From Octopus sinensis (lineage: Eukaryota), in the NCBI RefSeq assembly GCF_006345805.1, contig NC_043005.1:14694001-14758000 (forward strand): a stretch of DNA of 64,000 nucleotides, in the 5' to 3' direction. Every line of letters starts with the position of its first letter. Positions within the stretch are counted from its first letter, which is position 1. Below the pieces are notes generated by a model. It was not told the DNA's origin and did no database searches. It saw nothing but the letters and a program-made list of their open reading frames with translations. Below, in pieces: positions 1,761 through 61,622 of this stretch. Both the position numbers and the translations under genes were made by a program.

Positions 1761-2019
1761 CAGTTTATTTACTGTACCTTTTTGGTGTTTATTGTACCTG
1801 TGTGTCTTCCACACACACAATGGCTATTTACCCTGTTAACCCTCCTCTGATATTGCTGCACCTCTTATATGTCCATAGTTTATTATTGCCATGATGCCTT
1901 TAGGTGCAAAAACTAAGCTTTTCTTTTTGTTTGGCATCACTTCTTACAAACTGATTGGCTGGAAAAATGTCAGTAGACTTTATAATAGAGTCAAGGAATA
2001 TATTGGATGAGGTGGTGAA

Positions 2020-2560: not shown

Positions 2561-3013
2561 TTTCTGTTGAAATGCTCTGTGTTTCTTTCAATTACTTTAA
2601 ATATAACAAAAAATTTAGTAAAATAACTTATCATTAAGCTAGTATTAGGAATATAAACTTTGACTAAGGTTTCGTGGAAGATTTTAATTCAGAACTTTTG
2701 AAAACAAGACGTTTGTACTGCAGAGCCAGAGACGTTTTCAGGCGGATTGGTATCAAAAGTGTTAAAGGATCTTACTAAAATAGCTGTGGTCAATATTATT
2801 CAGCAGAGGTTTTTAATTTTTAACTTAAACACTGCAGGTCAAATTTTACAACAGTTGTCTGCATGGCACATACAACAATTGTCATCAACTACAGTCCCTG
2901 GCTAAGTAAGGCCTTCTGAGTGTAAATGATAGGCAGAAATTGGAAAACATCCATCATTCACATACACACACAACAGCGAAAAGACAATATTTGTAGCATT
3001 AAGTGAAACACAC

Positions 3014-3230
3014 TAAGGCGGTGAGCTGGCAGAAATGTTAGCACACCGGGCAAAATACTTAGTGGTATTTCGTCTGTCTTTACATTCTGAGTTCAAATTC
3101 TGCTGAGGTCGACTTTGCTTTTCATTCTTTCGGGGTCAATAAGTACCAGTTGCGTACTGGTGACAATCTAATTGACTAGACTCTCCCCGCAAATTTCAGG
3201 CCTTGTGCCTAGAGTAGAAAAGATTAAATA
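3014..3230 (+). mobile_element. tRNA-derived SINE with 8-bp TSD (aaacacac)
   Basis: GGCGGTGAGCTGGCAGAA head, B-box-like GAGTTCAAATTC, TSD at 3006-3013 and 3231-3238. Confidence 0.7.
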
Positions 3231-3339
3231 AAACACACCTGACCCCAGACATATTGGATGCAGAAATACATATGTCAGGCTATGTACTACACAGAACTGA
3301 TCACAGAATAAAGAAACAATGAGGAGTAGCACTCTACAT

Positions 3340-5170: not shown

Positions 5171-5317
5171 ACAGACTCTATCATCGACCAACTTTTAATC
5201 ATAATGTGACAACAAAACTAAAAAAAAATTAAATTAAGGAAGTGCTCTAGCATGGCCGCAGTCCAGAGACTGAAACCATTAAAAGAATAAAAGAATATAT
5301 ATATATATATATATATA

Positions 5318-5770
5318 TGACACGTAAAAGCACCATCCGTTCGTGGCCGTTTGCCAGCTCTGTCTGGCCCCCGTGCCGGTGACACGTAAAAGCACCATCC
5401 ATTCGTGGCCGTTTGCCAGCCCTGTCTGGCCCCCATGACGGTGACATGTAAAAGCACCATCCGTTCGTGGCCGTTTGCCAGCCCTGTCTGGCCACCATGT
5501 CGGTGACATGTAAAAGCACCATCCGTTCGTGTCTGTTGCCAGCCTCGCCTGGCCCCGTGCCGGTGACACATAAAAGCACCATCCGTTTCATGGCCGTTTG
5601 CCAGCTCTGTCTGGCCCCCGTGTTGGTGGCACGTAAAAGCACCATCCGTTCGTGTCCATTGCCAGCCTCGCCTGGCCCCGTGCCGGTGACACGTAAAAGC
5701 ACCATCCGTTCATGGCCGTTTGCCAGCTCTGTCTGGCACCTGTGCGGGTGGCACGTAAAAAGCACCCACT
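5318..5770 (+). repeat. Minisatellite of 60/62-bp units (7 units) inside an RTE 3' region
   Basis: Repeating tgacacgtaaaagcaccatccgttcgtggccgtttgccagc...; leads into the RTE 3' end and (ATG)n tail at ~5910. Source of the spurious ORFs at 5218-5814. Confidence 0.9.
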
Positions 5771-5936
5771 ACACTCACGGAGTGGTGGGCGTTAGGAAGG
5801 GCATCCAGCCGTAGAAACACTGCCAGATCTGACTGGGCCTGATGAAGCCTTCCAGCTTCACAGACCCCAGTTGAACCGTCCAACCCATGCTAGCATGGAG
5901 AACGGACGCTAAATGATGATGATGATGATGATGATG

Positions 5937-5985
<49 letters not shown>

Positions 5986-6119
5986 AAGTATTGGTTATAG
6001 AAACAAAAGAAGTGCTCAAATATACATGAGACAAAGATAAAGAAGCATTCGTTATAGAACCAAAATTCTTTTGCAGTCCTATAAACCCTTTTGTTTCTAT
6101 AATATGAGACAAATTTTAT

Positions 6120-7140
6120 CATCATCATCGTTTAACGTCCACTTTCCATGCTAGCATGGGTTGCACGATTTGAACAAGGATTGGCGAACCAGTTGGCTGC
6201 ACCTAGCTCCAATCTGATGTGGCAGACTTTCTACAGCTGGATGCCCTTCCTAACACCAACCACTTCGAGAGTGTAGTGGGTGCTTTTACATGCCACCGGC
6301 ATGAGAGCCAGTCAGGCAGTACTCGCAACGGCCACACTCGAGTGATGTTTTTTATATGCCACTTGTATAGGAGCCAGAGGCAGTGGCAACAACCTCGTTC
6401 GAATGTGTTTCACTTGCTACCAGCACAAGTGCCAGTAAGGTGATGCCGGTAACAATCATGATTGAATGGTGCTTTTTACATGCCATTGCCATGGAAGCCA
6501 ATCAACTGCTCTGGCAGCGATCATACACGGATGGTGCTCTTGGAGCTCCACTGTCATTGGTGCCAGTCATTGAATTTGCGAATTTGATTTGATTTTGATT
6601 TCACTTGCCTCAACAGGTCTTCACAAGCAGAGTTTAGTGACCAATGAAGGAAAGGTATGCATAAGTGGGCTGGTTACACCCCTGGCATAGGCCACAGGTT
6701 ATGGTCTCACTTGGATTGCCAGGTCTTCTCATGCACTGCATATTTCCAAGGTCTCAGTCACTAGTCATTGCCTCAGTGAAGCCTAACGTTTGAAGGTCAT
6801 GCTTCACCACCTCATCCCAGGTCTTCCTGGGTCTACCTCTTTCACGGGTTCCCTCAACCGCTAGAGTGTGGCAATTTTCACACAGCTATCCTCATCCATT
6901 CTTGCCACATACCCAAACCATCGCAGTTGTCTCTCTTGCACACCATATCTGATGCTCCTTAGATCCAACTTTTCTCTCAAGGTACTGACATTCTGTCAAG
7001 TATGCACACTGACATTATACATCCATCGAATCATACTGGCTTTATTCCTTGCAAGCTTACACATATCCTCAGTAGTGATGGTCCATGCTTCATGCCATGT
7101 AGCACGGCTGTTTGTACATATGTAGCACGGCAGTTCGTAC
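6120..7140 (-). mobile_element. RTE LINE 3' portion (mirror ~61630-62580 +)
   Basis: The mirror copy encodes AMLHGSEAWSVTAEDM...LRWMC; (ATG)n tail. Confidence 0.75.
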
Positions 7141-7620
7141 TCAAATATGATATATATATATATATGTGTGTGGGTGTGAGTGTGTGTGTGTGTGTATGTG
7201 TGTGTGTGCAGGTTGTATCTCCTTCACATCATATAGTTGTTGTAAACGAACATCCCCGTCATACAAGCAGTGTCCCTTGTTTCCAATCTACCATGATTTA
7301 TTTCCACACCATCAGGAAATATTACATTCCTTGGAAGCAAGTGAGGGTTAGTGAGAGGAAGGGCATCCACCTAGAAATAATCTACCTCAACAAATTCCTT
7401 ACGACCCATACAAGCAGGTACAAAATGAATATTAAAATACTGATGATGATGATGATGATGAGGAGGAGGAGGAGGAGGATAAAGGTGAGAAATATAATTG
7501 GAAATGTGACAGAATCTCTATGTAGAGCATCGGAATGTAGTGTTTAGTTTTACATCTTTGGTTTGGAAAATGGATTTGGTGCCAGGAAGATTTATCTGTT
7601 GAAACAACAGCATGGATCAT

Positions 7621-7661
7621 TTAGAATTCATCCTGCTCCCTCTCTTTATTATTAATAACAT
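7621..7661 (-). CDS. Left gene exon 6 coding part (DVINNKEREQDEF*)
   Basis: Follows an 85-nt intron; acttttgccag| acceptor, phase 1, TAA at 7621-7623. Confidence 0.8.
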
Positions 7662-8513
7662 CTGGCAAAAGTCACACAAGCAAAATTACAGAACTATTTC
7701 ATTGTTTCTTATAAGATTGTATGAGAAATACTTTTTATCAACTTACCATTTATTGATTTACATTCATGGTAAGGAACTTGAGATAATTGATCAAGAAGAT
7801 AAATACAGGAATATATTTCAGAAGTATCCATATTCTTCACTTTGATCTAAATTAAAGTAACAAAAAGAAAAGCAACAAAATTACATCTCCAGGAATTACA
7901 TGGCTTTAGACAGGTGTCACATTTGTTCTGGACCCAGTAATTAAACAGATGGGGAACACCTCACTTATCCATCCACTCAGCAATTTTATCTCTTCTTCAA
8001 CTGAAGTGTTCTTTCAAATATTGATAACTTCATACAAGACCATCTTTACAGGGGCTCAGCTGCTCACATTCTTTACACATGATTTAGGAAACTCAAAACA
8101 ACATAAAGGAATTCTATTGGATCCACAGATGATGGCATCAGGGACAGAACCTGGTCTTGTCATCTTAATAAATTCAACTTGAAAATATTATTCCATTCTA
8201 AATCATAAATTCATGTAGAACTGAATGTTGAATCACAGTTAGTGATGGAGTCTGGTAGATATAACCTGTCTACATTTGGGTCTCTTACCTATTCTATATC
8301 CCCCATTTGTGTCTACATAAGTTGCCTAGACTGCCTCTTGGTATATCATCTCACCTTTGTATCAGTTCTCTATCACTCATCTCTCTATTATCCACCCACA
8401 CTCCACCACCAGCCTGTCTAACTAACAATAACAGTGAATCTCTCCTTTTCTCTGTACCCTGCAGTCATTGTAGGAATGTTACTGGACCTGTCTACCCTCT
8501 TGTCTCTCTCATA

Positions 8514-8555
<42 letters not shown>

Positions 8556-10640
8556 CTTACTCTCTTCCATTATGCCTCTACTATAAAGGGTGGCACTGGA
8601 ACTATCTGTACTCAATACTGCCTACAACCAGTCTTGTCCTCTCTTTCAATGCAGTCAACATCCTTTTTCTCTTTTCTTTTGCCACCCCTCAGTCCCATCT
8701 TTCTGTTTCTGCTATCATACACTTGGCCCCTTCCCCAAACACATCCTAGTTTGCTCCCACCATCACTCTACCTGCTACCCACCCTGTTTGTTGTCAAGAA
8801 TGTGACAGTCTCTCTAGTAGGGGACCATGCATGTGTGTGCCTGTGTAAATATTCACATTCTGCCCTGGGGTAAGCCAGAGACGACGATGATGACGTTTGT
8901 TGTCATTTCCCCATCAGAAAATTGTCCTGTAGCACTGCACATTCAAAGACAGGTGGAATAACATCTCCCTTCATAGAAAGCCAGGAAAGGGTTAGTGACA
9001 TAAAAAACACTGAGTTGAAAAGCATCTCCTTCATAATATGTATTCATCTAACCCATGCTAGAATAGAAAAAAGCAGTTGTAAAGCAAACAAATATATTCA
9101 TAGAATATTTGTTTATTTACAATGTTGTGTATATCAGAACTGAATTAAATCTAAATATTAAAGTATGATATTCTCTTTCATCCTTTTTTTTTTTTACTAT
9201 AATCTTGTTTCACCCAATGTGAGGTTTTAGAATATTTAAATATATAAGCAGGCATACGTACAGTAATAATCATTAATACAGTTGGTTATGTTAATAAATG
9301 TCTAAGGGGCTTATTTGGAAAAGCTGAGATTATTTATACAAATCTAAAAAACATGACAGGCAAGAAATATATTGAGGTTCAGTCAAGCAGGTATACTCAT
9401 TCTAAATGAAAAAGTAATAAAGGGTTTTACTTACATCTGTGCCCAGCTGAAATTTTCCTCTTGTCAATAACTTAATTTCTGACAGTGTATTCATTTCCGT
9501 AGGAAGGAGGAATGATTTATTTGCTGTTGTTGAATTTGGTTGAAATACTACCTTCTGTTTAACATAAGGGTCTAACCTTATATAAAACTCATATTTGCCA
9601 TATGCGTTATTACGTTGAACTTCAAAGGTCCAGTGTGTCCCTAGAAAGTAAGAGACAAAAAACGTCATCATCAGGCACAACAAAATTTCAAAATTATTAA
9701 ACATAAAATGATCATTGTCTTGTAAGGAGGTTGGATTTCAAATAAAATCATTAGAATATGATTGGAAAACATTTAGTTTTCCAATCATAGATTTATTACG
9801 TTTCTTTTCTTTTGTAATTTATTGAGATTATTTATTTCTATATCAAACAACAGAAGGAGAGGCTTTAAAAACTTTAAATAGTCACACATATGAGAAGGTA
9901 CCCAAAAGTAACTGGAAGCATTCTCTATGGGAAAAGCCCATTGTAGTCGAGGATTCTGAATTGACAAACTTTTTGATATGACTGGTGTGTCCTGGAGCTG
10001 CTGCCAACAAATTTTGAACAAGGAATTTCAAATGAAAAGAGTTGCAGCAAAATTTGTGCTTCACTTGTTCACAGAAGATCAGAAAGCAGTCTTGACTGAA
10101 TGTGTGACTCCTCTTACCCTGCCTCCCTATTCACCTGATCTTGCTCTTTGCAACTGTTTTTTTTTTTGTTCCTCTGAATAAAAAATGTCCTCAAAGGAAA
10201 ACATTTTGCAGATGTGGAAGAGAGGAAGTAAAAAACAAAACAAGCGTCAAAAGGCATCACTTTGCAAGAGTTCCAGGACTGCTTTGAACAGTGGTCTGAA
10301 TCGATGCATTGCTTCAAATGGAGAATACTTTGATGGCGATAGAAGTGTAAACATGTAAGACTAAGTGAATAAAATAATATAGCAAAATTCTGGTTTCTTT
10401 TGGGTGTTCTAGATCAGTGATTTTCAAGTCAGTTTAACTCTGAACCCTTTTCTGTCCCTAATGCTATTTTTAAATTACCCCAACCTTGTTATGATTCAAT
10501 GCATCTCTTCTTCTGATGTATATATATTAAAAATACGCAGCCATGTTCTGTGGCTAAGATGCTCAATTTGCAACCAGATCATTTAGTGTTTACTTCCAAT
10601 ATGTGGCACCTTGGAAAAGTGCCTACTACTATAAGTATAA

Positions 10641-10695
<55 letters not shown>

Positions 10696-13600
10696 CAAAT
10701 GAAAGACAGAAGATGGAATATACAAGAATTTTTTATTAGTCCCGACAATTGTTTCGGTACATCTAGCATTGATTCCTCTTGGGTGGGACACTCAACAACT
10801 GATTCTGGAGCATCTGGTGGTGCAGTTGTATCTCGTTGGGTGATGAATAAATAAAAACAACTCGTTAAAATAACTGTTCCACAACGTAACTTTCTGTTTT
10901 GTAGAGAGAAAAAAACAGCCAGACGGAGGAAAAAAATCTTCATATTTATATAGAAGATGAAAAATAAAATTGCAGAAGACAGAGAAACAAACATGTAATC
11001 CAGTGAGAGAAGTATTGAAAATAGCCATTAATAGATATGGATGTATAAACGTCCTCGGGCAAGCTGCATGGCATGAATACACAAGTGCATACAAGCATCA
11101 GCAAAAATGTGAGCATACACAAATGCTAGGTTTGGTGCAGTCCTGATCACAAAGTGAGTCAGTTATTTACTAGGTGTTTAGAAGAACGAGGAGGTTAAAA
11201 GTAAACTTAAGTCATCCATGCCTTAAAGTAAATTAAATTACATTGTGTTAACGGTTATTCAAAATTCCTTCTCACTGCATTATGCAAAAGTACATTTATA
11301 TGCATCTCAATAGTCGTTCAGAGATTCTATTAGGTATCTTCTCGTTAGTCCACAGAATATACAGGGATTCCTCGAAGCAGAGACAGCATCTCCTGGAAAT
11401 TACATCGTATGGTTTTGTATGTCTAACTATGGACCAATTAATGTTGTACTTCGTTTTACCCTCCTTCAGTCGCCATATAAAATCTGCCAAAGATGTCGAA
11501 TGTCTCTTATTGATTGATTTAAAGCTGGCAATATGGTTATGATGATGATTCTTAAATGAATCAGTGCCGTCTGCCCAATGTAATCATAGAGCCCTTCCCT
11601 TGTGTGCACGGTACATTTATATACAAGATTTGTACTCATACAGAGATTCATTAAAGGACATTTTGATTTATCTCTCCATGAGCATTTATCATATTTATTT
11701 GTATACAAGTCAGTCCCAACTCCATTTACCAGCGCTGTTATCGTGCTAGCTGTACCATGAGTATTTCTCCTACTACAAACTGGTCAAAGTTGATGACTAT
11801 CAATGTGGTTTACATCTCCTTGGTTGGTATTTAGATGCAAATGTTTGCTAGACCCAGTATGACAATATCGAACAGCTCTTCAGATGCTGTCAAACACTGC
11901 TAGGCACAATGCACTTCCAATTTTGTCTAGATTGTGTCATTCTTTTCCATCTCAACCGAAACTGTTTGACTGAATCATCTTCCCATTGTCACGGAGGCCC
12001 TCCAAATGGCCTTTTCTACACTCTGGGATATCACTTGGCAACTGCATGGTTCCACCTGTTGTCTGTGAACCTTGTGACATATCCAGCACAGTGGAACTTG
12101 TGCTTTCGATACCCTGCCATCACATTGTTCACTGAGCGCCATCCTCAAACTATTTCGAATTCTCTCAGTCATGTTCCTAGCATGGATCTTTCCATGGACC
12201 TTTGCACCATAGCCAATCAATATTTTATCTTCTTCATAGTAGCCCATGTCTCATTTGTGTGCCCTACATGGAGGGGGTGTTCTATTATTACAATTATCAC
12301 CATAACAATAATCAATGATTCATATGGAAACTTGCTTGCTCTCTCGACTGTTAGTGGCTGACATATTTTGATAGTCCGGTGACTATGATCCTTGTAAACG
12401 CCTTATAGGGGTGAGACAAGAGGCATATGCAGTGATAGTTTTTAAAATTTTCTTTATCACTCTTCTTGTGACGTAGAATGGTATTTGAAGATATTTTACC
12501 CTCCTTTAGAAAGTGGTTGAAATGTAGAATGAGGATTTTCCATAGTTCTTCACATTCACATCTTAAAAACTCTGTTGTGATGCCATTTTCCCAAGCGCTA
12601 TTTCTGTTTTCACCAGTTTGAGGGTTTTTCCAATGCCACTTATTGGAAGAGGTGGCACTTCTTCCTGCATTTGTTGCAGTGTGGAATCAAGCTTCAGCAA
12701 TGATTTAAGAACATTAGTGTAGAAGGTGTTATGTCCTCTCTCCTCCTCGGTCACCTTGAGCTCATCCTTATGCAACATACTTAATGTATGTGTGTTGTTC
12801 AACTGCCAGACCCTTTGGTTGTTCATTATAGGAAAATCCCTTCTTGATGGACGTATTGTGATGAAAACACAATATACTTCAGATCTAAGTAAAAAAAAAT
12901 CACCCCAGAATTCACTGTGAGGAAAACTAATACATATTTCCCTGATGTGGTGCATTGTCAGTGTCACATCCTCATTTCATTTCTAAAGCAAAATCAAACC
13001 GGCCAGTGTGGAACATATTGAGATAGTATATAAACTGTACACTGGTTTGCAATGGTATTGTGTAAGCTGAAAAAAAGAGAAACAAGAACACACAGCCTCT
13101 GTCTTTTCAGTCACACACAGACATTAAGTTATCTTGATAAATAGATATTGAGATATTAAATTAGAAGGACACTCAAAAGGGTAATATTTACACATTAACC
13201 TGTGCTTTAGTAAATTCTTCTAAATAGGGGAAAAAGACTTATGAATGGATTTTAATCAGTATGATTCATATAATTAAAAAAATAAAATCTCTCTCGGCTG
13301 GTTCGTCAGGCTGGAGTGGGCTATAGAAACTATGCTGATGAGGTCAAATAAACTGAAACATGACTGTAGTTATCTCATCCTTCAACATGGATCGTGTATT
13401 TCCTAATCTCATTAAATTTGGCTGATAATTTTTTTCAGTTTTGGGAAACAATCTCCCTGTTTCCTTTGAATTTTGCTTACACTGACCACAGAATTTTGCT
13501 TCCTTTCTAAAGATAAAAGACTAAATTTCAGTTGTGGCAAGAGTCACAGCACCCCCTGCAAGAATAGACTGACCAAACGTCTAAAAATAGTAGCGGTCTG

Positions 13601-16600
13601 AATGATATAGGAGAGTAGGCATTGATCGCAGGATGTCTTAGGTGTCATTTTGGCAGTTTGTTGGAATATCGTTTATTGGTTCATGGATAGTTTTTTGGAT
13701 CGTTAAGTTGTTGTTACCCTGCTTCGTTATATGCTTTATTATTACTCCACAATTATAATGTAAAAATATATCGTCATAACAATTGGCAATACAACAATTT
13801 CATTTAAGAATTTTTGCATATGGCATTCAATGTATTACCCCTAAATATATTATATTCAAATTCATGTAATTATTTCATTTGACTTATCTCTCATGAATCA
13901 CTTCTTTTTTTCATCTAATTCTATGAAATATATTGGCCAAAATTATCGGTAACTGTTTTCCTATCTGTAAAAACGTTTCTTATTTGGAATAACTTTACAG
14001 ATGTTTGTCTTTTCTTATCGCTGACAAAACAATTGTGAATTGAACCACTAAATGTAGAATAATGTGTCTTTCTTGGGGATTGAAAGGCAACAATAAGATT
14101 TGAACTCATAATATGAACCTTTCAAGTTGAATTCATTAATATTACAGTCACATGCTCCCTTGTGCATTTTGTAGGGTGTAGGGGTTGTACTAAGGAAAAC
14201 AATTCCTTGAGGAATTAAAGGAGAAGAAAAAAAACAGTAAAAGAACAAACAATAAAGAACAGTTCTGAGGCAAAATCTTACAATTTGATAATGTCATTTT
14301 GGCTCCTGGACATGGTGCTTCGCACAGAACACCATACGCTTCTTCAAGATCTTTATTTTCAATAACTATCTACAATAGAAGATCAGTGCAGGAATTTAAA
14401 ATAGTTTCATGATGATAATGATGATGGTGGTACTGATGGTGGTTGTAGTGGTGATGATGATGGTGGAGGTGATGAGGATGGTAGTGGTAGTGTTGGAAGT
14501 GGTGGTGGAGATGGTGGTAATGGTTGTGTTGGTGACGATGATGTTCATGATGAGAGTGATGATGATGATAATGATGATGGGGATGATAATGATGATGGTA
14601 ATGATGATCACGGTGACAATAAAACATTTGTAGTAAACGGCCAGTACAGACCAGTGTGGAATAGTGTCCTCACACACACACCCACACACATATTAAACCA
14701 GCTTCTTTCAGTTTCTGCCTCCGAAATCCACTCACAAAAAAATCTTGGTCAGCCAAGGGGTTTAATAGAAAATACTTGCCTAAGGTGCCACATTGAGAGA
14801 TGAATTGAAACCATATGAGCCCACTTTTTAAGCATACACCAATCCCTGTGCCTTTATACACACACACACACATACACACACCTGGCTCTCCATGCTTGTG
14901 AGATTAATGTGCAAGTGGCCGAGTATTCCACAGAATACATACTCTTAACATAGTTGTCAGGGAGATTCAGTGTGACACAGAATATGAAAAGGATGGTCCC
15001 TTTCAAACAGGCACTACTCAATTTTTGCCAACTGAGTAGACTGGAGCAATGTGAAATAAAGTGTCTTGCTCAAGGACTGAATGTGCCACCAGGAATCGAA
15101 CTCATAACCTTATGAGAGTGAGCTGAATATTCTAACCACTAGCCACCTGCCTTTACTAGACACACATACACAGGGAGAATGCAGAGCAAAATGTTATAAA
15201 CTGTTTCATGTTGAAAGACCTTTGGACAAACTTTACACCTAATTCCACAGCCATTCTCATATGCCCCTCCAGATCAAACTTTGAGAGATTAATCAATAAT
15301 AGACAGATATTTACACATGCTTAAGGAAATGATTAAATGGGATGTATAAACAAATTCTTTGGGGATCCTGAAATGGTTTAATGATATTTAGAATAAGAAA
15401 ACTACTAGATTCTTTCAAATAGATATCACTAACTACTATGCATCCATCGGCCATGTCCAATGAAATTGTAAGAAGGATTATACTGGGATGAAGCATTATT
15501 CACTATCTGTAATTGTAGCAAAAATAAAGTTGAACAGTATAAGGAAAATCTTTTGCAATTTTAAAATAGATCTGGATTTTCCATCTCTGTAGAGACAGAT
15601 CATAGTAAAGTAAAAAATTTTTTAGATATTACCCTTGACCTTATTTCTGAACTGCATCAACCATTTCACAAACCCAGTGACAACCTTAAGTACATAAGCC
15701 ACAACTCAAATCATCCAAAATGCATTATAAACTCTATAATTAAGGCAGTCTCAATTAGAATTTCTAAGCTTTTAACTAGGAAAAAATTTTTAAACAACAT
15801 GGGAGATATAACCTAACTTCAGCTGAAGTCGGTTACCAAGAAGAAATTAAATACATCCCAAATAGTAGTGATTCAGTCAAAGATAATAATGTTAACAATG
15901 GACAAATTATGATTCTGGTGACTCACAGGTGGTGTAGTTAGGACAAAGGACACAGAAACACCCTTAACCAACAGAAAGAAAGATAAGTGAACACACATAA
16001 AAGTAAGAGACAATCGAGTAACATTAATTCAAGTAAATTGACTGCTAAATCTTCACAACCTCCCAAATATGGTAGGTATAATGTTAATCACCAGCAAGAG
16101 GTGGAAGATAGGAAGCGTGGTGTGCAATAATCGCCCATATAAGATTTATTTTAATACAAGCTGACTAGCTCATGACAAAAGCATGAAGAGGAATAGTGAA
16201 GAATGTAGTAATTCTAAGAAACAGAGTGGTAGATTAAAGCAAGTAGTCTGATATAATGCACCATTGACATTGCAAATCACCACCAGTATCCTGAGACAAT
16301 TCTTCGTGGCCTTAGAAAAGCAGTTCCCACAACACAGCTTACACTGGTTATGCCTATGAAGTTCCTAAGGCAGCTGCAGGAGAAATATGTAGCCAAAGAT
16401 AAAATCTTTGTACTTGGCTTTTGTGACTTAGAGAAAGCCTTTGACAGGGTCCCCTGATCCCTCGTCAGATGGTCAATATGGAAACTAGGGATAGTTTCCA
16501 ATGAATGGCTGGTGAGAGCTGTACAAACCATGTACAGGGATGCTGTCAGTAAGGTGAGGGTTGGCAATGAGTACAGTGAAGATTTCAGGGTACAAGTAGA

Positions 16601-19600
16601 GGTTAACCAAAGATTGGTGCTCAGGCCCTCTTGTTCATCATAGTTCTCCAGGCAATAACAGAGGAAGATAGGCTGCCTCTGAGAGTTCCTCTATTCTGAT
16701 GACCTTGTTCTTATCGCTGAATCATTACCAGAACTAGAGAAGAGGTATGAAGCAAGGTCTAGAATTGAAGGGTCTTTGAGTTAACCTAGCAAAAACCAAA
16801 GCATTAGTAAGTAGGAAGGCAGACAAATTACAAATCCCTTCAGGTAGATGGACCTGCTTGATCTGTAGGAAAGAGATACGTAGAAACTCCATAATATGTT
16901 CTGAGTGTAAGTCATAGACATATAAGTGGTGCAAAAATATCAGAAGATGCATGGGAACAATAAATACAGAAAATTGACTCTATCAACTGCCAGGCGTGTA
17001 AGCTTCCATTATTTAGGTGACCAAGTTTGTAGCAGAGGTGGATGCTCCGAGAGCATAGCTGTGAGAATAAGATTAGGCAGGACAAAGTTCAGAGAGCTTC
17101 TACATCTGCTAGCAACAAAGACTTCTCTCTCAGATTGTATGATGCCTGTATGTGAATAGCCATGCTGCATGGCAGTGAAACATGGGCTGTGACAGTTGAG
17201 GACATGTGTTGGCTTGAAACAAATGAAGCCAGTATGCTTCACTGGATGTGCAACGCAAGTGTGCATGTTCAACAGAGTGTAAGCAACTTGAGGGAAATGT
17301 TGGGCATAAGAGGCACTGGATGTGGTGTGCAAGAGAGATGACTGTGATGTGATGTGTATGGATGAAGATAGCTGTGGAAAGAAGCAACAATCTCTAATTG
17401 TGGAGGGAAGCTACGGTAGAGGTGGATCCAGGAAGACATGGGATGAGGTGGTCTTCGAACTTTAGGCCTCACGGAGGCAGTGACTAGTGACAAGGACCTT
17501 TGGTGAAATGCTGTGCTTCAGAAGACCCATCAAGTCATGTGAAATTGTGATTATGGCCATTGCTGGTGTTGTGTAACTGGCACCTGTGCTGGTGACACAT
17601 AAAAATACATTTCAAGCATTGGGCCTCACCGAGGCAAGATGGCCAATGTCAGTGACACATAAAAAGCATCTTTCAAGTGTTGGGTCTCATAGAGGCAATG
17701 ATGAATGACGAAGACTCTTGACATTTTGCCAAGTGAAATCATAATTGTGTCAGATACTGGTGTCATGTGAATGACACCAGTATCTGACACAATACTGTTG
17801 ACATTAGGAAGGGCATCCAGCTATTGAAACCAAGCTAAATCAGACTGGAGTCTGGTGCAGCTTCTAGCTTGCCTGTTCTGGTCAAATCATCCAACTCATG
17901 CCACATTGGACAACGGATATTAAATGATGATGATGATATATATATGTATATGTATGGATGTATTTATGTATGTATTGATGATGATGATGATTATGGGACA
18001 GACAGAAGACAGATAGACATGGCCAGTCTATGGGGTTAGCCTGGGTTTCACATCCATAAAGCGCTTAGCTTTACAGTGTTTCTTCAGACCCTAAAATCCG
18101 TTGGCCTATGGCTTCTCTAGAAAATGGAGGAGGAAAAAGGACATCATTATTCAACAACCAGTGATTGTTGCTTTGACTGCTAATTAACTGACCATGTTGG
18201 CATGTAGATCCCAGGACACCAGCAAGAATTTCCTGAAGTGCATGCAGGGTCCAAAGACCACTATCCTAGATTTAAGGATATTCCCTATATCAAGGGAGTC
18301 CTTTTAATATTCTCATCTATTTGGCTATGCACAGTTTACAGTGCTTGGTCCCATTTATGTAATGACCTGGAGTTTCTAGGATCCTCCCTAATGTTATGTG
18401 TGGGGTCTTTCAGCCACCATGCATGACTGGCTAAGGATGAAGCATATCTCCTTTCTGGGATCCTGAAAGAGGATTTGTGGTTGGAGAAGTGCTGTTTGAA
18501 TGTGTTACTGAAACATCCGATATGTCTCCATGTTTAGGTGTTGGCAATAGTTTCTGTTGATGTTACTACCATTGTTGTTGGTATTTGTGTTGGCATCGTT
18601 GAAGCTGGTGTTGGTGTTTGTGCAGTTAATACTTGCTGCTGTTGTTATTATTATTTTTATTCCCAATCACACTTCCACCATCATCAGAAAAGAGGCTGTC
18701 TATATCAAGGCTTATATTAATTTTAGTGTTAGGGTTATAGGCAAGGCTTTGTCTATTTGGGTCAATGCTAGTACTACCACTGCTATGATTTATATTCCAT
18801 ATTAGGCAGAGATGAATGGGATAACTTTAGAGTAGATCTGCTGAAGATCAAACTATATTATGGTGATATGGAAAGTTAGAGTCTATGATGGCAAAGAAGG
18901 TTTTGGCTAAGCCCTTAAGCTTAAAGAAAAGTGGGGTGTATACCTGTTATGGAGATTATATCCCCCCACGTGATGAGTGGTATGTGGCTGTCATTATAAA
19001 TACTGTCAGTTAGTGTCAGTGTAGGAGAGAGTACAAAGTAGACAGTCATAGATAGTCGTGGCCTTTTCTAACTAACTATGCTGCTTTAATGCTCTGGACA
19101 TTACAACAGTCTGACAAAGGATTACAATAGTGGCGATGAGGAATTAACAAGCTCACAAAAGTATTTTGTGCAAATTTTATGGTATACAAAATCGTAAAAT
19201 CATGGTAAAGTTGTTGGCCAGTTTGCTTGAATTGCTAAAAGAGCAACAACAACTGAAAGAACAATAACAGCAGCAGCTACAACTGCAAGAGCAACAGCAA
19301 CAAATGCTGCAATTAATGAAGTTGTCTAAAAATGTTGAGAAGATGTTCCCGCTAGATTATGTTGCAAATTGAACAACGAAGTTTAAGAATGAACCAGACA
19401 AAGGAGTTACCTTCAAAGCATACTACAGAAGATACAAACAAATCTTCAATAAAGAGTGCAAAGTTTGGGACGACGATATGAAAATGCATCTTATCTTAAG
19501 AAAACTGGCAGCAGCAGTGCATTATAGTAATTATATACTCCCGAGAAACCCTTCTGGATACAAAAGACATACTGTGTAAAATTTCTAGTGAGAAAAGCTC

Positions 19601-20745: not shown

Positions 20746-21971
20746 TTATTCTAATTTACCTGGAACTCCGTAGATGGACGAATGTCAATAGAATGTGGTC
20801 TTGTGTCGTTGACCAAGTCAATTTCAGTTGTGAAGCAGTTGTCCTCGTTTGGACATGTTATGTTTGTATATGTATCCCCGTTCAAAATAAGGTGAACTGA
20901 AGACTTATGTGCCTCAGTGTAACAAATTTCCACATTCCATTTTCTGGCCTGGGTATCTGACAAATAATTTGAAAAAATGAAAAATGTTTATCAATTATTT
21001 TCAAAACATCTTTAAAATATTTATACTGTGAATAGTTATTCTATTCTTCTCCTCTCTAGTAATTTATTACCAATTTCAGCCAGACTGTGGCCATGCTGGG
21101 GCACCACCCTAGTTATGCCAAAAAAACTAGTGTATAATATTGGAATTTTTTTTGAAAAAAACACCAAAATCTGAATAATTATTGTCAGTTGGAACTCTTC
21201 AAACATTTACTTTCAAGAAACTATGTTTTTTTTCTTTATATATGTTTTGTTCATGAATAAATCTGTTTGCCTTATTTTTAAAATCATTTTTCTCTACAAC
21301 AACCACTCTAGTTTCATGACAGAATGCCTGATGCTAATGCAGTGGAAAGAATTACTTTATCATTATGGCCAGTATTTCTCTGCTTTTCTCTTTTACATTT
21401 CAATATCCATTCCATCAATGCTAACATGAAAGAAGGAAAAACAGAGTAGAAGCCAGGAAGCTCACAACAAAACCATAAGCAATTTCTGAAATGGAACATC
21501 ATTATCATCATTTCAATATCTACCTTTCCCATGCTTGCATGGGTCAGGTGGAATTTTTTGAGGCAGATTTTCTACAACTGGATGCTATTCCTGTCACCAA
21601 CTCTCACCTTTTTCCATAAAACTGGTAACAAGGGACACTGCCTTTATGATGGTGATGCTTGTTACAGTCATCACGAGAGGTCACAACAAAGGCAGCAAAC
21701 ACACATGCACATAGCTTTTATGTTTTACTTGTTTCAGTCACTAGACTGTGGCCATGCTGGGGCACCACCTTGAAGAATTTCTAATCGAACGAATTAACCC
21801 AAATACTTTTATTTTCCTTTAAGCCTGCTACTTATTCTATTGATCTCTTTGCCAAACTGCTAAGTTATGGGGACACAAACACAGCAACACTGGTTGCCAA
21901 GCTTGTGGGGTGGGGGGAGACAAACAGACAAAAAGACACACACACACAGATACATACATATGTGTTTGTCA

Positions 21972-28000: not shown

Positions 28001-28637
28001 TCTGAAAATAAACAATCACATCATTGAAACCTCAAAGCTATAAGATAATGCATGATTAATTCAAAACAATTTGAGTGAAAAAGTATTACATTTAACAGAG
28101 TATTCTGAACACTAAAGGGTTAAACTTTGAGCTACCATATTTCTGTTGAAATGCACTGCCATTGTCTATTAATTTTGGAAGTTGTGAAGAATTCATTTAA
28201 ATAACTTTGTCATTATGAAGCAAATGTTTGGAACATGACATGAGATTTTGATGGCAGGTTTTACTTCAGATGAATTTAAAACAGAGAATGTCTATGATTC
28301 AACCAGGAGTGACGTTACTATGTGGTTTGGGATCAAAAAGATTAAACCAAGTGATAGATAAGGTCAACCACCCAAGAACAGGAACAGAAATGAACTCTAC
28401 AACAGGCTACCACAGAATCCCCAACTATCCAGTTCCACACTTTAGATTTTAGCTGACCTGAGACTGTTGTACAAGACCCTAATCCAGGGTACCATACAGT
28501 AGAAACTGACCTGAAAACAAACCTCTTCATTATACACAGCCATACATAATGATTGCAGAAATAAATAAATAAGAGAACTTACAAAAGAAATGAGGTAAAA
28601 CAAAGAATAAAATACTGCAATAGGAAAGAACCAGCAT
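7621..28637 (-). CDS. Six-exon gene, left paralog; 228-aa predicted secretory/ER-luminal protein with two beta-rich repeats and C-terminal QDEF
   Basis: Exons of 55+197+88+206+100+41 = 687 nt. All introns are GT-AG with phases 1,0,1,0,1. Translation: MLVLSYCSILFFVLPHFFYTQARKWNVEICYTEAHKSSVHLILNGDTYTNITCPNEDNCFTTEIDLVNDTRPHSIDIRPSTEFQIVIENKDLEEAYGVLCEAPCPGAKMTLSNWTHWTFEVQRNNAYGKYEFYIRLDPYVKQKVVFQPNSTTANKSFLLPTEMNTLSEIKLLTRGKFQLGTDIKVKNMDTSEIYSCIYLLDQLSQVPYHECKSINDVINNKEREQDEF*. No transcript evidence is available to me. Confidence 0.85.
7747..7846 (-). CDS. Left gene exon 5 (IKVKNMDTSEIYSCIYLLDQLSQVPYHECKSIN)
   Basis: tttaatttag| acceptor, g|gtaagt donor, 100 nt, phase 0 to 1. Confidence 0.88.
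9435..9640 (-). CDS. Left gene exon 4 (first part of repeat domain 2)
   Basis: ttactttctag| acceptor, gat|gtaagt donor, 206 nt, phase 1 to 0. Confidence 0.9.
9889..10413 (+). mobile_element. Internally deleted mariner/Tc1 relic (mirror 58342-58867 -)
   Basis: PPYSPDLA motif, RVAAKFV, C-terminal CIASNGEYFDG, degenerate TIRs (cccaaaagtaactggaa / ttctggtttcttttggg). Confidence 0.85.
11290..11730 (-). mobile_element. Penelope-like GIY-YIG endonuclease relic (mirror ~57050-57490 +)
   Basis: KCPL..LVYKCTV..YIGQT; FIWRLKE..YNINWSIV..RRCCLCFEES. Confidence 0.8.
11960..12230 (-). mobile_element. Old RTE-like LINE 3' relic (mirror ~56520-56830 +)
   Basis: Degenerate CAGYVTRFTDNRW..YPR..KRPFGGP. Confidence 0.6.
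14282..14369 (-). CDS. Left gene exon 3 (IVIENKDLEEAYGVLCEAPCPGAKMTLSN)
   Basis: cttctattgtag| acceptor, t|gtaaga donor. Phase 0 to 1 exactly bridges exons 2 and 4, and the N-terminal part resembles exon 5. Confidence 0.8.
14409..14630. repeat. Degenerate trinucleotide (GAT/GGT) tract (mirror ~54165-54360)
   Basis: Low-complexity tract, ~40 nt upstream of the exon 3 acceptor. Confidence 0.9.
15150..16150 (+). mobile_element. Penelope-like RT relic (mirror ~52400-53560 -, which retains an extra ~245 bp)
   Basis: FLDITLDL..LHQPFHKPSDNLKYISHNSNHPKCII; degenerate LYWDEA (YRDDG-type) motif. Confidence 0.7.
16270..17935 (+). mobile_element. RTE LINE RT and 3' end, degenerate; only the 5' part is mirrored at ~51690-52270 (-)
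   Basis: FCDLEKAFDRVP, LVRAVQTMYRDAVSKVRVG, FLYSDDLVLIAES, RIRLGRTKFRELL; (ATG)n tail. Confidence 0.88.
18190..18640 (-). mobile_element. Penelope-like GIY-YIG relic (left arm only)
   Basis: NTFKQHFSNHKSSFR..SHAWWLKD..NGTKHCKLC. Confidence 0.65.
18937..20521 (+). mobile_element. 3'-truncated Ty3/gypsy LTR retrotransposon (5' LTR ~18937-19126, PBS 19131-19141, degenerate gag and protease)
   Basis: TGTA...TACA LTR ends, TGGCGATGAGG PBS, Q-rich gag start, degenerate CCHC knuckle, MQLDT protease-like motif, multiple stops. Confidence 0.8.
20760..20956 (-). CDS. Left gene exon 2 (first part of repeat domain 1)
   Basis: ttatttgtcag| acceptor, cag|gtaaat donor, 197 nt open, phase 1 to 0. Confidence 0.88.
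22022..22420 (-). mobile_element. tRNA-derived SINE (family also at ~29020-29418 and ~35110-35510)
   Basis: Head caggagtggctgtgtggtaag...ggttcagtcccact, internal CA/TA microsatellite. I recognise it as an abundant Octopus-type SINE. Confidence 0.85.
22435..23281 (-). mobile_element. Non-autonomous Helitron (~847 bp) carrying a PIF1-type helicase fragment
   Basis: 3' hairpin plus CTAG before T. ORF has LAPRN, INDKML, SID, YPIEVLNS, GLPPH, KVGAPIMLIRNL, CNGTRL. The 5' TC is mutated. Confidence 0.92.
23281..23800. repeat. ~166-bp satellite, 3 units plus partial
   Basis: Unit starts at 23281, 23447, 23613 and 23778. Confidence 0.92.
24161..24346. repeat. Zero-spacer palindrome, 93-bp arms, 1 mismatch, centre 24253/24254
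   Basis: Arms compared base by base; imperfect symmetry continues outward to ~24010 and ~24470. Confidence 0.95.
25270..25949. repeat. ~166-bp satellite, 4 units, inverted relative to 23281-23800
   Basis: Repeating aaagttttttaggacgaaaataagatctaaag... Confidence 0.92.
25950..26795 (+). mobile_element. Non-autonomous Helitron (846 bp) carrying a PIF1-type helicase fragment
   Basis: a|TC at 25950, cccgagcaacgccggg hairpin, CTAG|t at 26792-26795. Near-identical to the copy at 22435-23281. Confidence 0.93.
27013..27408 (+). mobile_element. Short non-autonomous Helitron (396 bp)
   Basis: a|TCTTTATATATAAAAG ... hairpin ... CTAG|t. Confidence 0.9.
28583..28637 (-). CDS. Left gene exon 1 (signal peptide)
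   Basis: gccATG context, MLVLSYCSILFFVLPHFF+T, donor T|gtaagt (phase 1). Confidence 0.8.
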
Positions 28638-44872: not shown

Positions 44873-44927
44873 ATGCTGGTTCTTACCTATTGCAGTATTT
44901 TATTCTTTGTTTTACCTCATTTCTTTT
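44873..44927 (+). CDS. Right gene exon 1 (signal peptide)
   Basis: gccATG, MLVLTYCSILFFVLPHFF+T|gtaagt. Confidence 0.8.
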
Positions 44928-58114: not shown

Positions 58115-61100
58115 TTATACTTATAGTAGTAGGCACTTTTCCAAGGTGCCACATATTGGAAGTAAACACTAAATGATCTGGTTGCAAATTGAGCATCTTA
58201 GCCACAGAACATGGCTGCGTATTTTTAATATATATACATCAGAAGAAGAGATGCATTGAATCATAACAAGGTTGGGGTAATTTAAAAATAGCATTAGGGA
58301 CAGAAAAGGGTTCAGAGTTAAACTGACTTGAAAATCACTGATCTAGAACACCCAAAAGAAACCGGAATTTTGCTATATTATTTTATTCACTTAGTCTTAC
58401 ATGTTTACACTTCTATCGCCATCAAAGTATTCTCCATTTGAAGCAATGCATCGATTCAGACCACTGTTCAAAGCAGTCCTGGAACTCTTGCAAAGTGATG
58501 CCTTTTGACGCTTGTTTTGTTTTTTACTTCCTCTCTTCCACATCTGCAAAATGTTTTCCTTTAAGGACATTTTTTATTCAGAGGAACAAAAAAAAAAAAC
58601 AGTTGCAAAGAGCAAGATCAGGTGAATAGGGAGGCAGGGTAAGAGGAGTCACACATTCAGTCAAGACTGCTTTCTGATCTTCTGTGAATAAGTGAAGCAC
58701 AAATTTTGCTGTGACTCTTTTCATTTGAAATTCCTTGTTCAAAATTTGTTGGCAGCAGCTCCAGGACACACCAGTCATATCAAAAAGTTTGTCAATTCAG
58801 AATCCTCGACTACAATGGGCTTTTCCCATAGAGAATGCTTCCAGTTACTTTTGGGTACCTTCTCATATGTGTGACTATTTAAAGTTTTTAAAGCCTCTCC
58901 TTCTGTTGTTTGATATAGAAATAAATAATATCAATAAATTACAAAAGAAAAGAAACGTAATAAATCTATGATTGGAAAACTAAATGTTTTCCAATCATAT
59001 TCTAATGATTTTATTTGAAATCCAACCTCCTTACAAGACAATGATCATTTTATGTTTATTAATTTTAAAATTTTGTTGTGCCTGATGATGACGTTTTTTG
59101 TCTCTTACTTTCTAGGGACACACTGGAGCTTTGTAGTTAAACGTGATCATGCATATGGTGAATATGAGTTTAATTTAGAGCTGGAACCTTACGTTAAAAT
59201 GGATGTAGTATTTAGACCAAATTCTAAAACATCAAATAAATCATTCCTCCTTCCTTCGGAAATGAATACACAGTCAGAAATTAAGTTATTGACAAGAGGA
59301 AAATTTCAGCTGGGCACAGATGTAAGTAAAACCCTTTATTACTTTTTCATTTAGAAGGAGTATACCTGCTTGACTGAACCTCAATATATTTCTTGCCTGT
59401 CATGTTTTTTAGATTTGTATAAATAATCTCAGCTTTTCCAAATAAGCCCCTTAGACATTTATTAACATAACCAACTGTATTAATGATTATTACTGTACGT
59501 ATGCCTGCTTATATATTTAAATATTCTAAAACCTCACATTGGGTGAAACAAGATTATAGTAAAAAAAAAAGGATGAAAGAGAATATCATACTTTAATATT
59601 TAGATTTAATTCAGTTCTGAAATACACAACATTGTAAATAAACAAATATTCTATGAATATATTTGTTTGCTTTACAACTGCGTTTTTCTATTCTAGCATG
59701 GGTTAGATGAATACATATTATGAAGGAGATGCTTTTCAACTCAGTGTTTTTTATGTCACTAACCCTTTCCTGGCTTTCAATGAAGGGAGATGTTATTCCA
59801 CCTGTCTTTGAATGTGCAGTGCTACAGGACAATTTTCTGATGGGGAAATGACAACAAACGTCATCATCATCGTCTCTGGCTTACCCCAGGGCAGAATGTG
59901 AATATTTACACTGGCATACACATGCATGGTCCCCTACTAGGGAGACTGTCACATTCTTGACAAAAAACAGGGTGGGTAGCAGGTAGAGTGATGGTGGGAG
60001 CAAACTAGGATGTGTTTGGGGAAGGGGCCAAGTGTATGATAGCAGAAACAGAAAGATGGGACTGAAGGGGTGGCAAAAGAAAAGAGAAAAAGGATGTTGA
60101 CTGCATTGAAAGAGAGGACAAGACTGGTTGTAGGCAGTATTGAGTACAGATGGTTCCAGTGCTACCCTTTATAGTAGAGGCATAATGGAAGAGAGTAAGG
60201 GGAGAGAGAGAGAGAGAGGAGAGTATAAGAGAGACAAGAGGGTAGACAGGTCTAGTAACATTCCTACAATGACTGCAGGGTACAGAGAAAAGGAGAGATT
60301 CACTGTTATTGTTAGTTAGACAGGCTGGTGGTGGAGTGTGGGTGGATAATAGAGAGATGAGTGATAGAGAACTGATACAAAGGTGAGATGATATACCAAG
60401 AGGCAGTCTAGGCAACTTATGTAGACACAAATGGGGGATATAGAATAGGTAAGAGACCCAAATGTAGACAGGTTATATCTACCAGACTCCATCACTAACT
60501 GTGATTCAACATTCAGTTCTACATGAATTTATGATTTAGAATGGAATAATATTTTCATGTTGAATTTATTAAGATGACAAGACCAGGTTCTGTCCCTGAT
60601 GCCATCATCTGTGGATCCAATAGAATTCCTTTATGTTGTTTTAAGTTTCTTAAATCATGTGTAAAGAATGTGAGCAGCTGAGCCCCTGTAAAGATGGTCT
60701 TGTATAAAGTTATCAATATTTGAAAGAACACTTCAGTTGAAGAAAAGATAAAATTGCTGAGTGGATGGATAAGTGAGGTGTTCCCCATCTGTTTAATTAC
60801 TTGGTCCAGAACAAATGTGACACCTGTCTAAAGCCATGTAATTCCTGGAGATGTAATTTTGTTGCTTTTCTTTTTCTTATTTTAATTTAGATCACGGTGA
60901 AGAATATGGATACTTCTGAAATATATTCCTGTATTTATCTTCAGTCTCCATCTACTGAACCTCCTTATCATGAATGTTTATTGGTAAATGGTAAGTTGAT
61001 AAAAAGTATTTCTCATACAATCTTATAAGAAACAATGAAATAGTTCTGTAATTTTGCCTGTGTGGCTTTTGCCAGGTGTTCTTGATAATAAAGAGAGGGA

Positions 61101-61524: not shown

Positions 61525-61622
<98 letters not shown>

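What the first reader, a model, noticed from the sequence alone, without database searches (positions are those of the whole stretch)
7310..9900. Homogenisation tracts stop at exon edges, leaving divergence islands
Exon 4 differences cluster in codons 4-39 (25 nt), and its last 16 codons are identical and continuous with the near-identical downstream intron. Exon 5 has an identical block (codons 3-17) between divergent patches. Two extra differences lie within ~20 nt of both the exon 5 and exon 6 acceptors. Identity drops abruptly to ~90% below ~7310. Inference: repeated conversion erases intron differences while selection rejects conversions that would overwrite the variable codons. The alternative is micro-conversion from a third paralog.
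Basis: partly seen in the sequence, partly recalled or inferred. Interest (0 to 1): 0.82.

Follow-up and report, generated by a model that had tools for sequence, protein, structure and literature searches.

The report
Diverged exons inside homogenised octopus gene duplicates
Two head-to-head copies of an octopus-only membrane-protein gene have almost identical introns but very different coding exons. This is a clean new example of a known pattern, in which copy-and-paste repair (gene conversion) keeps duplicates alike except where their protein sequences have diverged.

Summary
The window is Octopus sinensis chromosome CM016867.1 and is one large palindrome. It carries two head-to-head paralogs of an uncharacterised, octopus-specific transmembrane protein: LOC118764737 on the left arm (minus strand) and LOC118764774 on the right arm. 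In 7303-9999 the arms differ at 46/306 exon sites against 30/2347 non-coding sites (p=2e-25). Exon 4 has 25 substitutions in 105 nt and exon 5 has 17 in 42 nt.

Synonymous divergence (dS about 0.14) matches unconverted non-coding parts of the same palindrome (13-17%), not the introns (about 1.3%). The exon islands are therefore old sequence, not fast evolution of a young duplicate. A four-way comparison with O. vulgaris shows that every exon-island difference is paralog-specific in both species (45:0).

Introns in the flagged interval also group by paralog, but shallowly, so homogenisation there predates the 2.5-My species split. The adjacent intron 3 shows sinensis-specific conversion.

Conversion is well supported. 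Selection as the protecting force, as opposed to a mismatch barrier, is untested. Island edges only approximate exon edges. This is a known kind of pattern (opsin LW/MW, RHD/RHCE).

The parts
9435..9640 (-). Exon 4 of the left copy (LOC118764737). It has a phase-1 acceptor ...ctttctag| and a donor |gtaagt.
   Evidence: The spliced model is identical to residues 1-216 of NCBI protein P0002. tblastn confirms it.
9524..9628 (-). Divergence island inside exon 4: 25 substitutions in 105 nt (24%), covering codons 4-39.
   Evidence: Difference list. HMM segment. In the species quartet all 26 shared differences in exon 4 are paralog-specific.
7747..7846 (-). Exon 5 of the left copy (100 nt, phase 0 to 1).
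7753..7794 (-). Divergence island inside exon 5: 17 substitutions in 42 nt (40%). It includes runs of 3-4 adjacent changes.
   Evidence: All 19 exon 5 differences are paralog-specific.
7621..7661 (-). It follows an AG, encodes (D)VINNKEREQDEF plus a stop codon, and is open in both arms. It is not in any annotated model. It may be an alternative terminal exon or an exon relic. Five paralog-specific differences lie in 7653-7679.
   Evidence: Annotated proteins continue with ...SMWRVELT... instead, which is encoded outside the window.
7200..7302 (.). Unconverted, old-divergence non-coding stretch (12.6%) inside a shared SINE-like element. A sharp tract boundary lies at 7302/7303.
   Evidence: In the quartet 19 of 27 variable sites below 7303 are paralog-specific.
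7303..16879 (.). High-identity block of the left arm, pairing with R about 61424-51686. Non-coding divergence is 0.3-2.4%, varying by sub-tract.
59116..59321 (+). Exon 4 of the right copy (LOC118764774).
   Evidence: P0018 and P0003 carry this sequence.
60891..60990 (+). Exon 5 of the right copy.
14282..14369 (-). Exon 3 of the left copy (R copy at 54397-54484). It has only 5 differences and is homogenised like the introns.
20760..20956 (-). Exon 2 of the left copy (R copy at 48108-48303). It differs at 33/196 sites against 3/118 in the adjacent intron 1, with omega about 2.
   Evidence: Quartet: 31 paralog sites, 0 species sites.
28583..28637 (-). Exon 1 of the left copy, encoding the signal peptide (R copy at 44873-44927). 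There is 1 difference.
10000..12000 (.). Part of intron 3 with O. sinensis-specific arm-to-arm conversion (R about 58756-56780).
   Evidence: d(sinL,sinR)=13/1916 against d(vulL,vulR)=44. Ortholog distances are 29 and 32. There are 8 species-grouping sites and 6 paralog-grouping sites.

Best explanation
The window holds an old inverted duplication: a palindrome of more than 100 kb with its centre near 37.4 kb. It carries two head-to-head copies of an octopus-specific single-pass membrane-protein gene.

Repeated non-reciprocal exchange between the arms (gene conversion) has reset most non-coding DNA, and also exons 1 and 3, to about 99% identity. This happened in several events of different ages. 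In the flagged interval (7303-9999) the last reset came shortly before the O. sinensis / O. vulgaris split. In intron 3 a reset came after it, in O. sinensis only.

Short stretches inside exons 2 and 4-10 were never overwritten. They keep the old divergence, raised further by amino-acid-changing substitutions.

Shown: the mosaic, its age structure, its conservation in two species, and post-speciation conversion next door.

Inferred: that the islands survive because conversions covering them are selected against, or because their own mismatches block heteroduplex formation. I cannot separate these two.
For: 1. Exon dS is 0.136 and dN is 0.156 over the spliced six-exon model (annotated exons 1-5 plus the unannotated 7661-7621 segment). 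4-fold sites differ at 4/58, against 1.28% in flanking introns (p=0.0066).
2. The same palindrome has non-coding stretches at the 'old' level. These are 7200-7302 at 12.6%, and 6260-7135 at about 17% with a TE truncation junction shared by both arms. The change at 7303 is sharp and falls inside a SINE.
3. In the quartet with O. vulgaris, exons 4+5 give 45 paralog, 0 species and 1 singleton site, and exon 2 gives 31 paralog and 0 species sites. Introns in 7303-9999 give 18 paralog sites and 26 singletons. The internal-to-terminal contrast has p=7.6e-10.
4. In intron 3 the sinensis arms differ at 13 sites, the vulgaris arms at 44, and orthologs at 29 and 32. There are 8 species-grouping sites. 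A second patch at 15500-16000 has 9 species against 4 paralog sites.
5. The pattern holds gene-wide in O. vulgaris: exons 6-10 are 11-18% diverged against 0.8-4% for their flanks. Islands overlap 8 of 9 exons.
6. Exon 5 of L is closer to O. bimaculoides P0013 (73%) than to R (67%). Exons 1 and 3 are 94% and 90% identical between L and R, but 48-83% identical to O. bimaculoides proteins.
7. Both arms are present in the same arrangement in independent assemblies of two species.
Against: - In the flagged interval, intron and exon topologies agree for the only sister species available. Conversion there rests on branch-length and dS arguments.
- The exon 5 patch (40%) and the exon 4 island (24%) exceed the 13-17% 'old' level, and exon 2 has omega about 2. 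Extra exon-specific change is therefore needed on top of retention.
- 11 of 19 islands gene-wide are non-exonic (microsatellites, block ends, the old flank), so islands are not an exon-only feature.
- The per-exon comparison with O. bimaculoides is at protein level, on short fast-evolving segments, and is not consistent across exons. Downstream exons place R, not L, nearest P0013.
- Nothing tests selection directly. Since the species split, exons 4-5 show 1 change where about 3 are expected, which is not significant.
Confidence: 0.7

Rival explanations
1. The inverted duplication is young (about 1% old). After it, very fast exon-restricted change produced the islands, by positive selection, by an exon-targeted mutational process, or by segment switching of the ASSET type described for snake toxin genes. 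No conversion is needed.
For: - Exons are far more diverged than introns, as in venom gene families (PMC2474615, PMC2711939).
- Exon 2 has omega about 2 and the whole CDS has omega about 1.15.
- The 42-nt patch at 40% has runs of adjacent changes.
Against: - Synonymous and 4-fold sites are also diverged.
- Non-coding stretches of the same palindrome sit at 13-17%, with a sharp boundary inside a SINE.
- There has been no acceleration since the 2.5-My split: 1 change in 306 nt across four lineages.
- Species-specific homogenisation in intron 3 shows that conversion does operate here.
- Exon 5 types appear to be shared with O. bimaculoides.
Confidence: 0.12
2. The islands were pasted into one arm by short ectopic conversions from a third, more distant family member elsewhere in the genome.
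For: - The family has other members in O. sinensis, such as LOC115217968 and LOC115217916 on another chromosome.
- O. bimaculoides has at least three genes in this subfamily (P0006, P0012, P0013).
- Patchy, multi-nucleotide differences are what micro-conversion would leave.
Against: - There is no third copy of any exon in the window.
- Protein searches found no O. sinensis or O. vulgaris protein closer to either island than the other arm is. The remaining family members are at most 46% identical in exon 4.
- Island divergence matches the unconverted flank, so no donor is needed.
- The same islands would have to be imported at nine exons.
Confidence: 0.08
3. The introns are alike because they are functionally constrained, not because they are converted.
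For: None specific. It is a logical alternative for any case where introns are more conserved than exons.
Against: - The near-identical introns are full of transposon remnants and microsatellites: a mariner-like fragment, a LINE reverse transcriptase and a GIY-YIG element.
- Orthologous introns differ as much as or more than the arms do in intron 3. Constraint cannot produce that.
Confidence: 0.03
4. The palindrome is an assembly artefact. Either it is a fold-back chimera, or two haplotypes were joined head to head, in which case the islands would be allelic.
For: The O. sinensis right copy has a 1-nt homopolymer deletion in exon 2 that O. vulgaris lacks. This hints at local assembly errors.
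Against: - The same two-arm, head-to-head arrangement occurs on one chromosome in an independent O. vulgaris assembly.
- The arms differ by kilobase-scale TE insertions.
- Both gene types are annotated as separate genes in both species.
Confidence: 0.02

Closest known systems
Primate red/green (LW/MW) opsin genes, and the Teshima-Innan model of duplicates diverging under gene conversion
   Same: Introns are homogenised by conversion while a peak of divergence persists over functionally different exon codons. Exons group by paralog across species (review PMC3924837).
   Different: - Here the duplicates are inverted (palindrome arms), not tandem.
- Islands occur in eight of nine exons rather than one, and span tens of codons.
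- The functional difference is unknown.
- In the flagged interval the introns do not group by species for the one sister species available.
[quoted passage not shown]
   Same: Local divergence peaks lie inside otherwise homogenised duplicates and are read as selection against conversion (PMC3924837; PMC3728101).
   Different: Those genes have known functions and population data. Here there are only two reference genomes and an orphan protein.
Arm-to-arm conversion in large palindromes of primate sex chromosomes
   Same: There are long inverted repeats around a spacer, genes in the arms, and arms that are more alike within a species than between species in some segments.
   Different: - Arm identity here is a mosaic (83-99.7%) rather than uniformly above 99.9%.
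- The arms are broken by TE insertions.
- The embedded genes are kept different rather than identical.
Accelerated exon evolution and ASSET in snake venom genes
   Same: Introns are much more conserved than coding exons, and short exon segments are radically different (PMC2474615, PMC2711939).
   Different: There is no sign of continuing acceleration. Synonymous sites are diverged to the level of unconverted flanks. Direct evidence for conversion exists nearby. There is no evidence that the protein is a toxin.

Membership tests
Concerted evolution with selected divergence islands (opsin / RHD-RHCE type) | Non-coding divergence between paralogs is far below synonymous or unconverted divergence. 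| tested here: met
   Introns are 1.28% diverged, against dS 0.136, 4-fold sites 6.9% and unconverted flanks 12.6-17%.
Concerted evolution with selected divergence islands (opsin / RHD-RHCE type) | Exons (islands) group by paralog across species. | tested here: met
   Exons 4+5 give 45 paralog and 0 species sites. Exon 2 gives 31 and 0.
Concerted evolution with selected divergence islands (opsin / RHD-RHCE type) | Introns group by species, meaning paralogs within a species are closer than orthologs. | tested here: inconclusive
   Not met in 7303-9999 (18 paralog, 0 species sites; arms 1.28% against orthologs 0.43-0.72%). Met in 10000-11999 for O. sinensis (arms 13 differences against orthologs 29 and 32). 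Also met at 15500-16000 (9 species against 4 paralog sites).
Concerted evolution with selected divergence islands (opsin / RHD-RHCE type) | Island sites carry a functional difference kept by selection. | not testable with these tools
   The protein is an orphan, with no Pfam, PDB or significant Foldseek match. Omega is 1.15 overall and about 2 in exon 2, without a significance test.
Palindrome with arm-to-arm gene conversion | Long inverted repeats around a spacer, present in independent assemblies. | tested here: met
   The arrangement also occurs in O. vulgaris.
Palindrome with arm-to-arm gene conversion | Species-specific homogenisation of the arms. | tested here: met
   In 10000-11999 the arms differ at 13 sites in sinensis and 44 in vulgaris.
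ASSET / accelerated exon evolution (venom-gene type) | Continuing excess of exon change over intron change along recent lineages. | tested here: not met
   Exons 4+5 (306 nt, four lineages) show 1 singleton. Introns show 26 in 2347 nt.
ASSET / accelerated exon evolution (venom-gene type) | dN significantly greater than dS. | tested here: inconclusive
   Omega is 1.15 overall, 1.98 in exon 2 and 0.8-0.9 in exons 4-5, from small counts.
Immunoglobulin-like cell-surface receptors | A recognisable Ig or beta-sandwich domain by profile or fold. | tested here: inconclusive
   - No Pfam family passes threshold.
- The AlphaFold model is all-beta with pLDDT 75-90 over residues 20-220.
- The best Foldseek hits are tandem Ig-like receptors (PirB/LILRB3, KIR), but only at E>=2e-3 and TM about 0.1.

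The most novel reading that the evidence does not exclude
The islands are not just relics. In this reading, this octopus-only surface-protein family has a process that replaces short exon segments wholesale, by segment switching or exon-targeted hypermutation. The palindrome's conversion machinery keeps everything else identical. The locus would then be a two-cassette diversity generator for an unknown recognition function. The 42-nt patch at 40% divergence, omega about 2 in exon 2, and island divergence above the 13-17% background are the only hints.
Probability: 0.08. Interest if true: 0.75.

Novelty: new member of a known kind. Interest (0 to 1): 0.4.

Why it matters
This is a tidy, multi-exon example of divergence islands surviving inside a conversion-homogenised duplicate, confirmed in two species. 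I found no earlier report from a cephalopod.

It marks the variable ectodomain stretches of an uncharacterised, octopus-specific membrane-protein pair as the parts most likely to matter for function. It gives dated conversion tracts, one before and one after a 2.5-My split, that could calibrate conversion rates in octopus genomes.

It also warns that trees built from the introns or flanks of such gene pairs will badly under-date the duplication.

Tried and rejected
- **First protein searches.** A Pfam scan and a first homology search with my exon 4-6 peptide gave nothing. The word-indexed search missed proteins that the exhaustive HMMER search later found.
- **RNA genes.** The Rfam and tRNA scans of the window were empty.
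- **Exon finding.** My strict splice-site exon finder missed exons 1-3. A looser, phase-constrained search plus the divergence-island signature found them.
- **'Exon 6' (7661-7621).** I first accepted it. I dropped it as an annotated exon once P0002 and P0017 showed a different continuation.
- **O. bimaculoides orthologs.** The genomic loci of P0012 and P0013 are not on record. P0006's locus turned out to be a third, non-palindromic paralog. No deeper intron tree was therefore possible.
- **Other look-ups.** P0001 and P0015 were not on record.
- **RNA-editing idea.** I considered that edited mRNA had been retro-copied into the gene. I rejected it because the substitution spectrum in the islands is mixed, not A-to-G.
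- **Purifying selection since the split.** I could not claim it for the exons: 1 change was observed where about 3 were expected, which is not significant.
- **Structure search.** It gave no significant fold match.
Full report
**What the window is.** The 64-kb window is a mosaic palindrome. The arms pair as 423-1091 with 64000-63332 (98.7%), 7145-16879 with 61580-51686, and further patches run inward to a centre near 37.4 kb. Identity ranges from 83% to over 99%, and the arms are broken by kilobase-scale transposon insertions. The window is 100% identical to Octopus sinensis chromosome CM016867.1 (GCA_006345805.1), locus L002. No tRNA or Rfam family is present.

**The gene.** Splice-site and phase logic gave a six-exon model on the minus strand of the left arm. 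The same approach gave a mirror model on the plus strand of the right arm. I located the first exons using the local clusters of arm differences.

| Exon | Left arm (minus strand) | Right arm (plus strand) |
|---|---|---|
| 1 | 28637-28583 | 44873-44927 |
| 2 | 20956-20760 | 48108-48303 |
| 3 | 14369-14282 | 54397-54484 |
| 4 | 9640-9435 | 59116-59321 |
| 5 | 7846-7747 | 60891-60990 |

An exhaustive HMMER search with exon 4 then found the annotated proteins:
- The first 216 residues of O. sinensis LOC118764737 (P0002) equal my exons 1-5 exactly.
- The right copy is LOC118764774 (P0018).
- O. vulgaris has both types: P0001/P0017 are L-type and P0003 is R-type.

The proteins are uncharacterised. 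They have a signal peptide, an all-beta ectodomain, one transmembrane helix and a Ser/Thr/Pro-rich tail. No Pfam family passes threshold, and there is no PDB sequence match and no significant Foldseek match. Every relative to which a source attaches a species name is from Octopus.

The annotated genes continue outward beyond both window ends. The real exon 6 lies about 200 nt left of position 1.

**The observation.** A two-state HMM beats a one-state model by 82 log-likelihood units. It calls 7200-7302 (12.6%), 7753-7794 (40%), 9524-9628 (24%) and a histidine-codon microsatellite (14417-14553) as high-divergence segments, against 1.0-2.4% elsewhere. In 7303-9999 exons differ at 46/306 sites and non-coding DNA at 30/2347 (p=1.7e-25).

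The pattern extends beyond the flagged range:
- Exon 2 differs at 33/196 sites, against 3/118 in the adjacent intron 1.
- In O. vulgaris, exons 6-10 differ by 11-18% against 0.8-4% for their flanks.
- Gene-wide in O. vulgaris, islands overlap 8 of 9 exons. However, 11 of the 19 islands are non-exonic.

**Old or fast?** Nei-Gojobori estimates over the spliced six-exon model (annotated exons 1-5 plus the unannotated 7661-7621 segment) give dS 0.136 and dN 0.156. Strict 4-fold sites differ at 4/58, which is well above the intron rate (p=0.0066). The same palindrome contains non-coding DNA at that older level. One stretch is 7200-7302 at 12.6%, with a sharp boundary inside a SINE-like element. Another is 6260-7135 at about 17%, where both arms share the same truncated-TE junction and so derive from one duplication. 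The islands are therefore at least as old as the unconverted parts of the duplication. A young duplicate with only amino-acid-driven change is rejected.

**Cross-species test.** I retrieved both arms of O. vulgaris (L001 and L003) and aligned the four arms.

| Region | Paralog-grouping sites | Species-grouping sites | Singletons |
|---|---|---|---|
| Exons 4+5 | 45 | 0 | 1 |
| Exon 2 | 31 | 0 | 4 |
| Non-coding 7303-9999 | 18 | 0 | 26 |

In non-coding 7303-9999 the arms differ by 1.28% in sinensis and 1.45% in vulgaris, while orthologs differ by 0.72% and 0.43%. In the flagged interval the intron tree therefore has the same topology as the exon tree, and homogenisation there predates the species split. 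That split is dated to about 2.5 My (cited in PMC10700109).

The ratio of internal to terminal changes is very different: 45:1 in exons against 18:26 in introns (p=7.6e-10). Exons and introns therefore do not share one history, and a uniformly faster exon clock cannot explain it.

Next door, in intron 3 (10000-11999), the sinensis arms differ at 13 sites, the vulgaris arms at 44, and the orthologs at 29 and 32. There are 8 species-grouping sites. This is direct evidence of conversion in O. sinensis after the split. A second such patch lies at 15500-16000.

**Deeper time.** At protein level, exon 5 of L is closer to O. bimaculoides P0013 (73%) than to R (67%), and R resembles P0012. Exons 1 and 3 are 94% and 90% identical between L and R, but only 48-83% identical to any O. 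bimaculoides protein. This fits a duplication about as old as the 34-My split (date cited in PMC10700109), with later homogenisation of some exons. The segments are short, however, and the signal is not consistent across exons. I could not obtain the O. bimaculoides loci.

**Mechanism.** The best reading is an old inverted duplication whose non-coding DNA and conserved exons are repeatedly reset by arm-to-arm conversion. Tracts that cover the diverged codons are not retained. Island edges lie inside exon 4 (12 nt from the acceptor, and 49-89 nt from the donor). They spill 10-18 nt into introns at exon 5 and at 7672/7679. They therefore follow the variable codons rather than the exon edges.

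Two forces would give this picture, and I cannot separate them. One is selection against losing the paralog-specific residues. The other is the islands' own mismatches blocking heteroduplex extension.

Island divergence (24-40%) exceeds the 13-17% background, and exon 2 has omega about 2. Some extra amino-acid-driven change is therefore likely as well.

**Rivals.** These are a young duplication with exon-restricted acceleration or segment switching, micro-conversion from a third locus, intron constraint, and assembly artefact. Each is weighed in its own section. No third copy exists in the window or among annotated proteins, but unannotated loci could not be searched.

**Comparison and novelty.** The pattern is the one described for primate LW/MW opsins, for RHD/RHCE and for Tigriopus GOT1 (PMC3924837, PMC3728101). 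It superficially resembles venom-gene ASSET (PMC2474615, PMC2711939). I found no cephalopod report. It is a new member of a known kind. It is a good teaching case and a pointer to functionally important ectodomain stretches in an orphan octopus gene pair, not a new mechanism.

Noticed in passing
window 48120 (right-copy exon 2): The O. sinensis right copy has a 1-nt deletion in an A-run (A4 to A3) that breaks the frame when the L-type acceptor is used. O. vulgaris R and both L copies have A4. It may be an assembly homopolymer error or a real frameshift rescued by an AG 8 nt downstream. It probably explains why NCBI's model LOC118764774 starts inside exon 4.
   Followed up: partly
window 7621-7661 and 14340-14369: The unannotated open segment after exon 5 (VINNKEREQDEF, then a stop) resembles the start of exon 3 (VIENKDLEEAYG). 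Other family members (P0005, P0014) repeat an exon 3 + exon 4 unit. The segment may therefore be the relic of a lost repeat exon, or an alternative terminal exon giving a secreted short form.
   Followed up: partly
window 14373-14669 (minus strand), array at 14418-14608: An 18-nt-period CAT/CAC-type microsatellite gives a 99-codon histidine-rich open frame just upstream of exon 3. It is the only HMM island in the high-identity block that is due to repeat slippage rather than substitution clusters.
   Followed up: no
window 16880-18651; 1092-7144 vs 61581-63331: There are arm-specific insertions: 1.77 kb in the left arm only, and about 6 kb against 1.75 kb of different transposon content near the outer ends. 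The latter includes a 62-nt tandem repeat at 5318-5766.
   Followed up: no
window 9880-10180 (+), 11300-11780 (-), 11955-12976 (-): Transposon remnants lie inside the near-identical intron 3: a mariner-like transposase fragment, a GIY-YIG (Penelope-like) fragment and a LINE reverse-transcriptase fragment. They are shared by both arms.
   Followed up: no
window 13000-13500 and scattered (10 sites): At these 'cross' sites sinL equals vulR and sinR equals vulL. Neither simple orthology nor simple conversion predicts this. It could reflect arm swapping by crossover within the palindrome, or ancestral polymorphism.
   Followed up: no
window 22429-23798 vs 25434-26801: A separate small inverted repeat (97-98%) with about 165-nt tandem repeats sits inside intron 1 of the left copy. 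Related copies occur at several other places in the window.
   Followed up: no
proteins P0004 (2296 aa) and P0007 (1923 aa): Very long relatives match the exon 4 domain in 10 and 5 separate stretches. The domain therefore also occurs in long tandem arrays. Their species and loci were not examined.
   Followed up: no
window 59256 (right-copy exon 4, codon 47): [quoted passage not shown] O. vulgaris R carries the L-type residue here. That could be a point change in sinensis or a one-site conversion in vulgaris.
   Followed up: no
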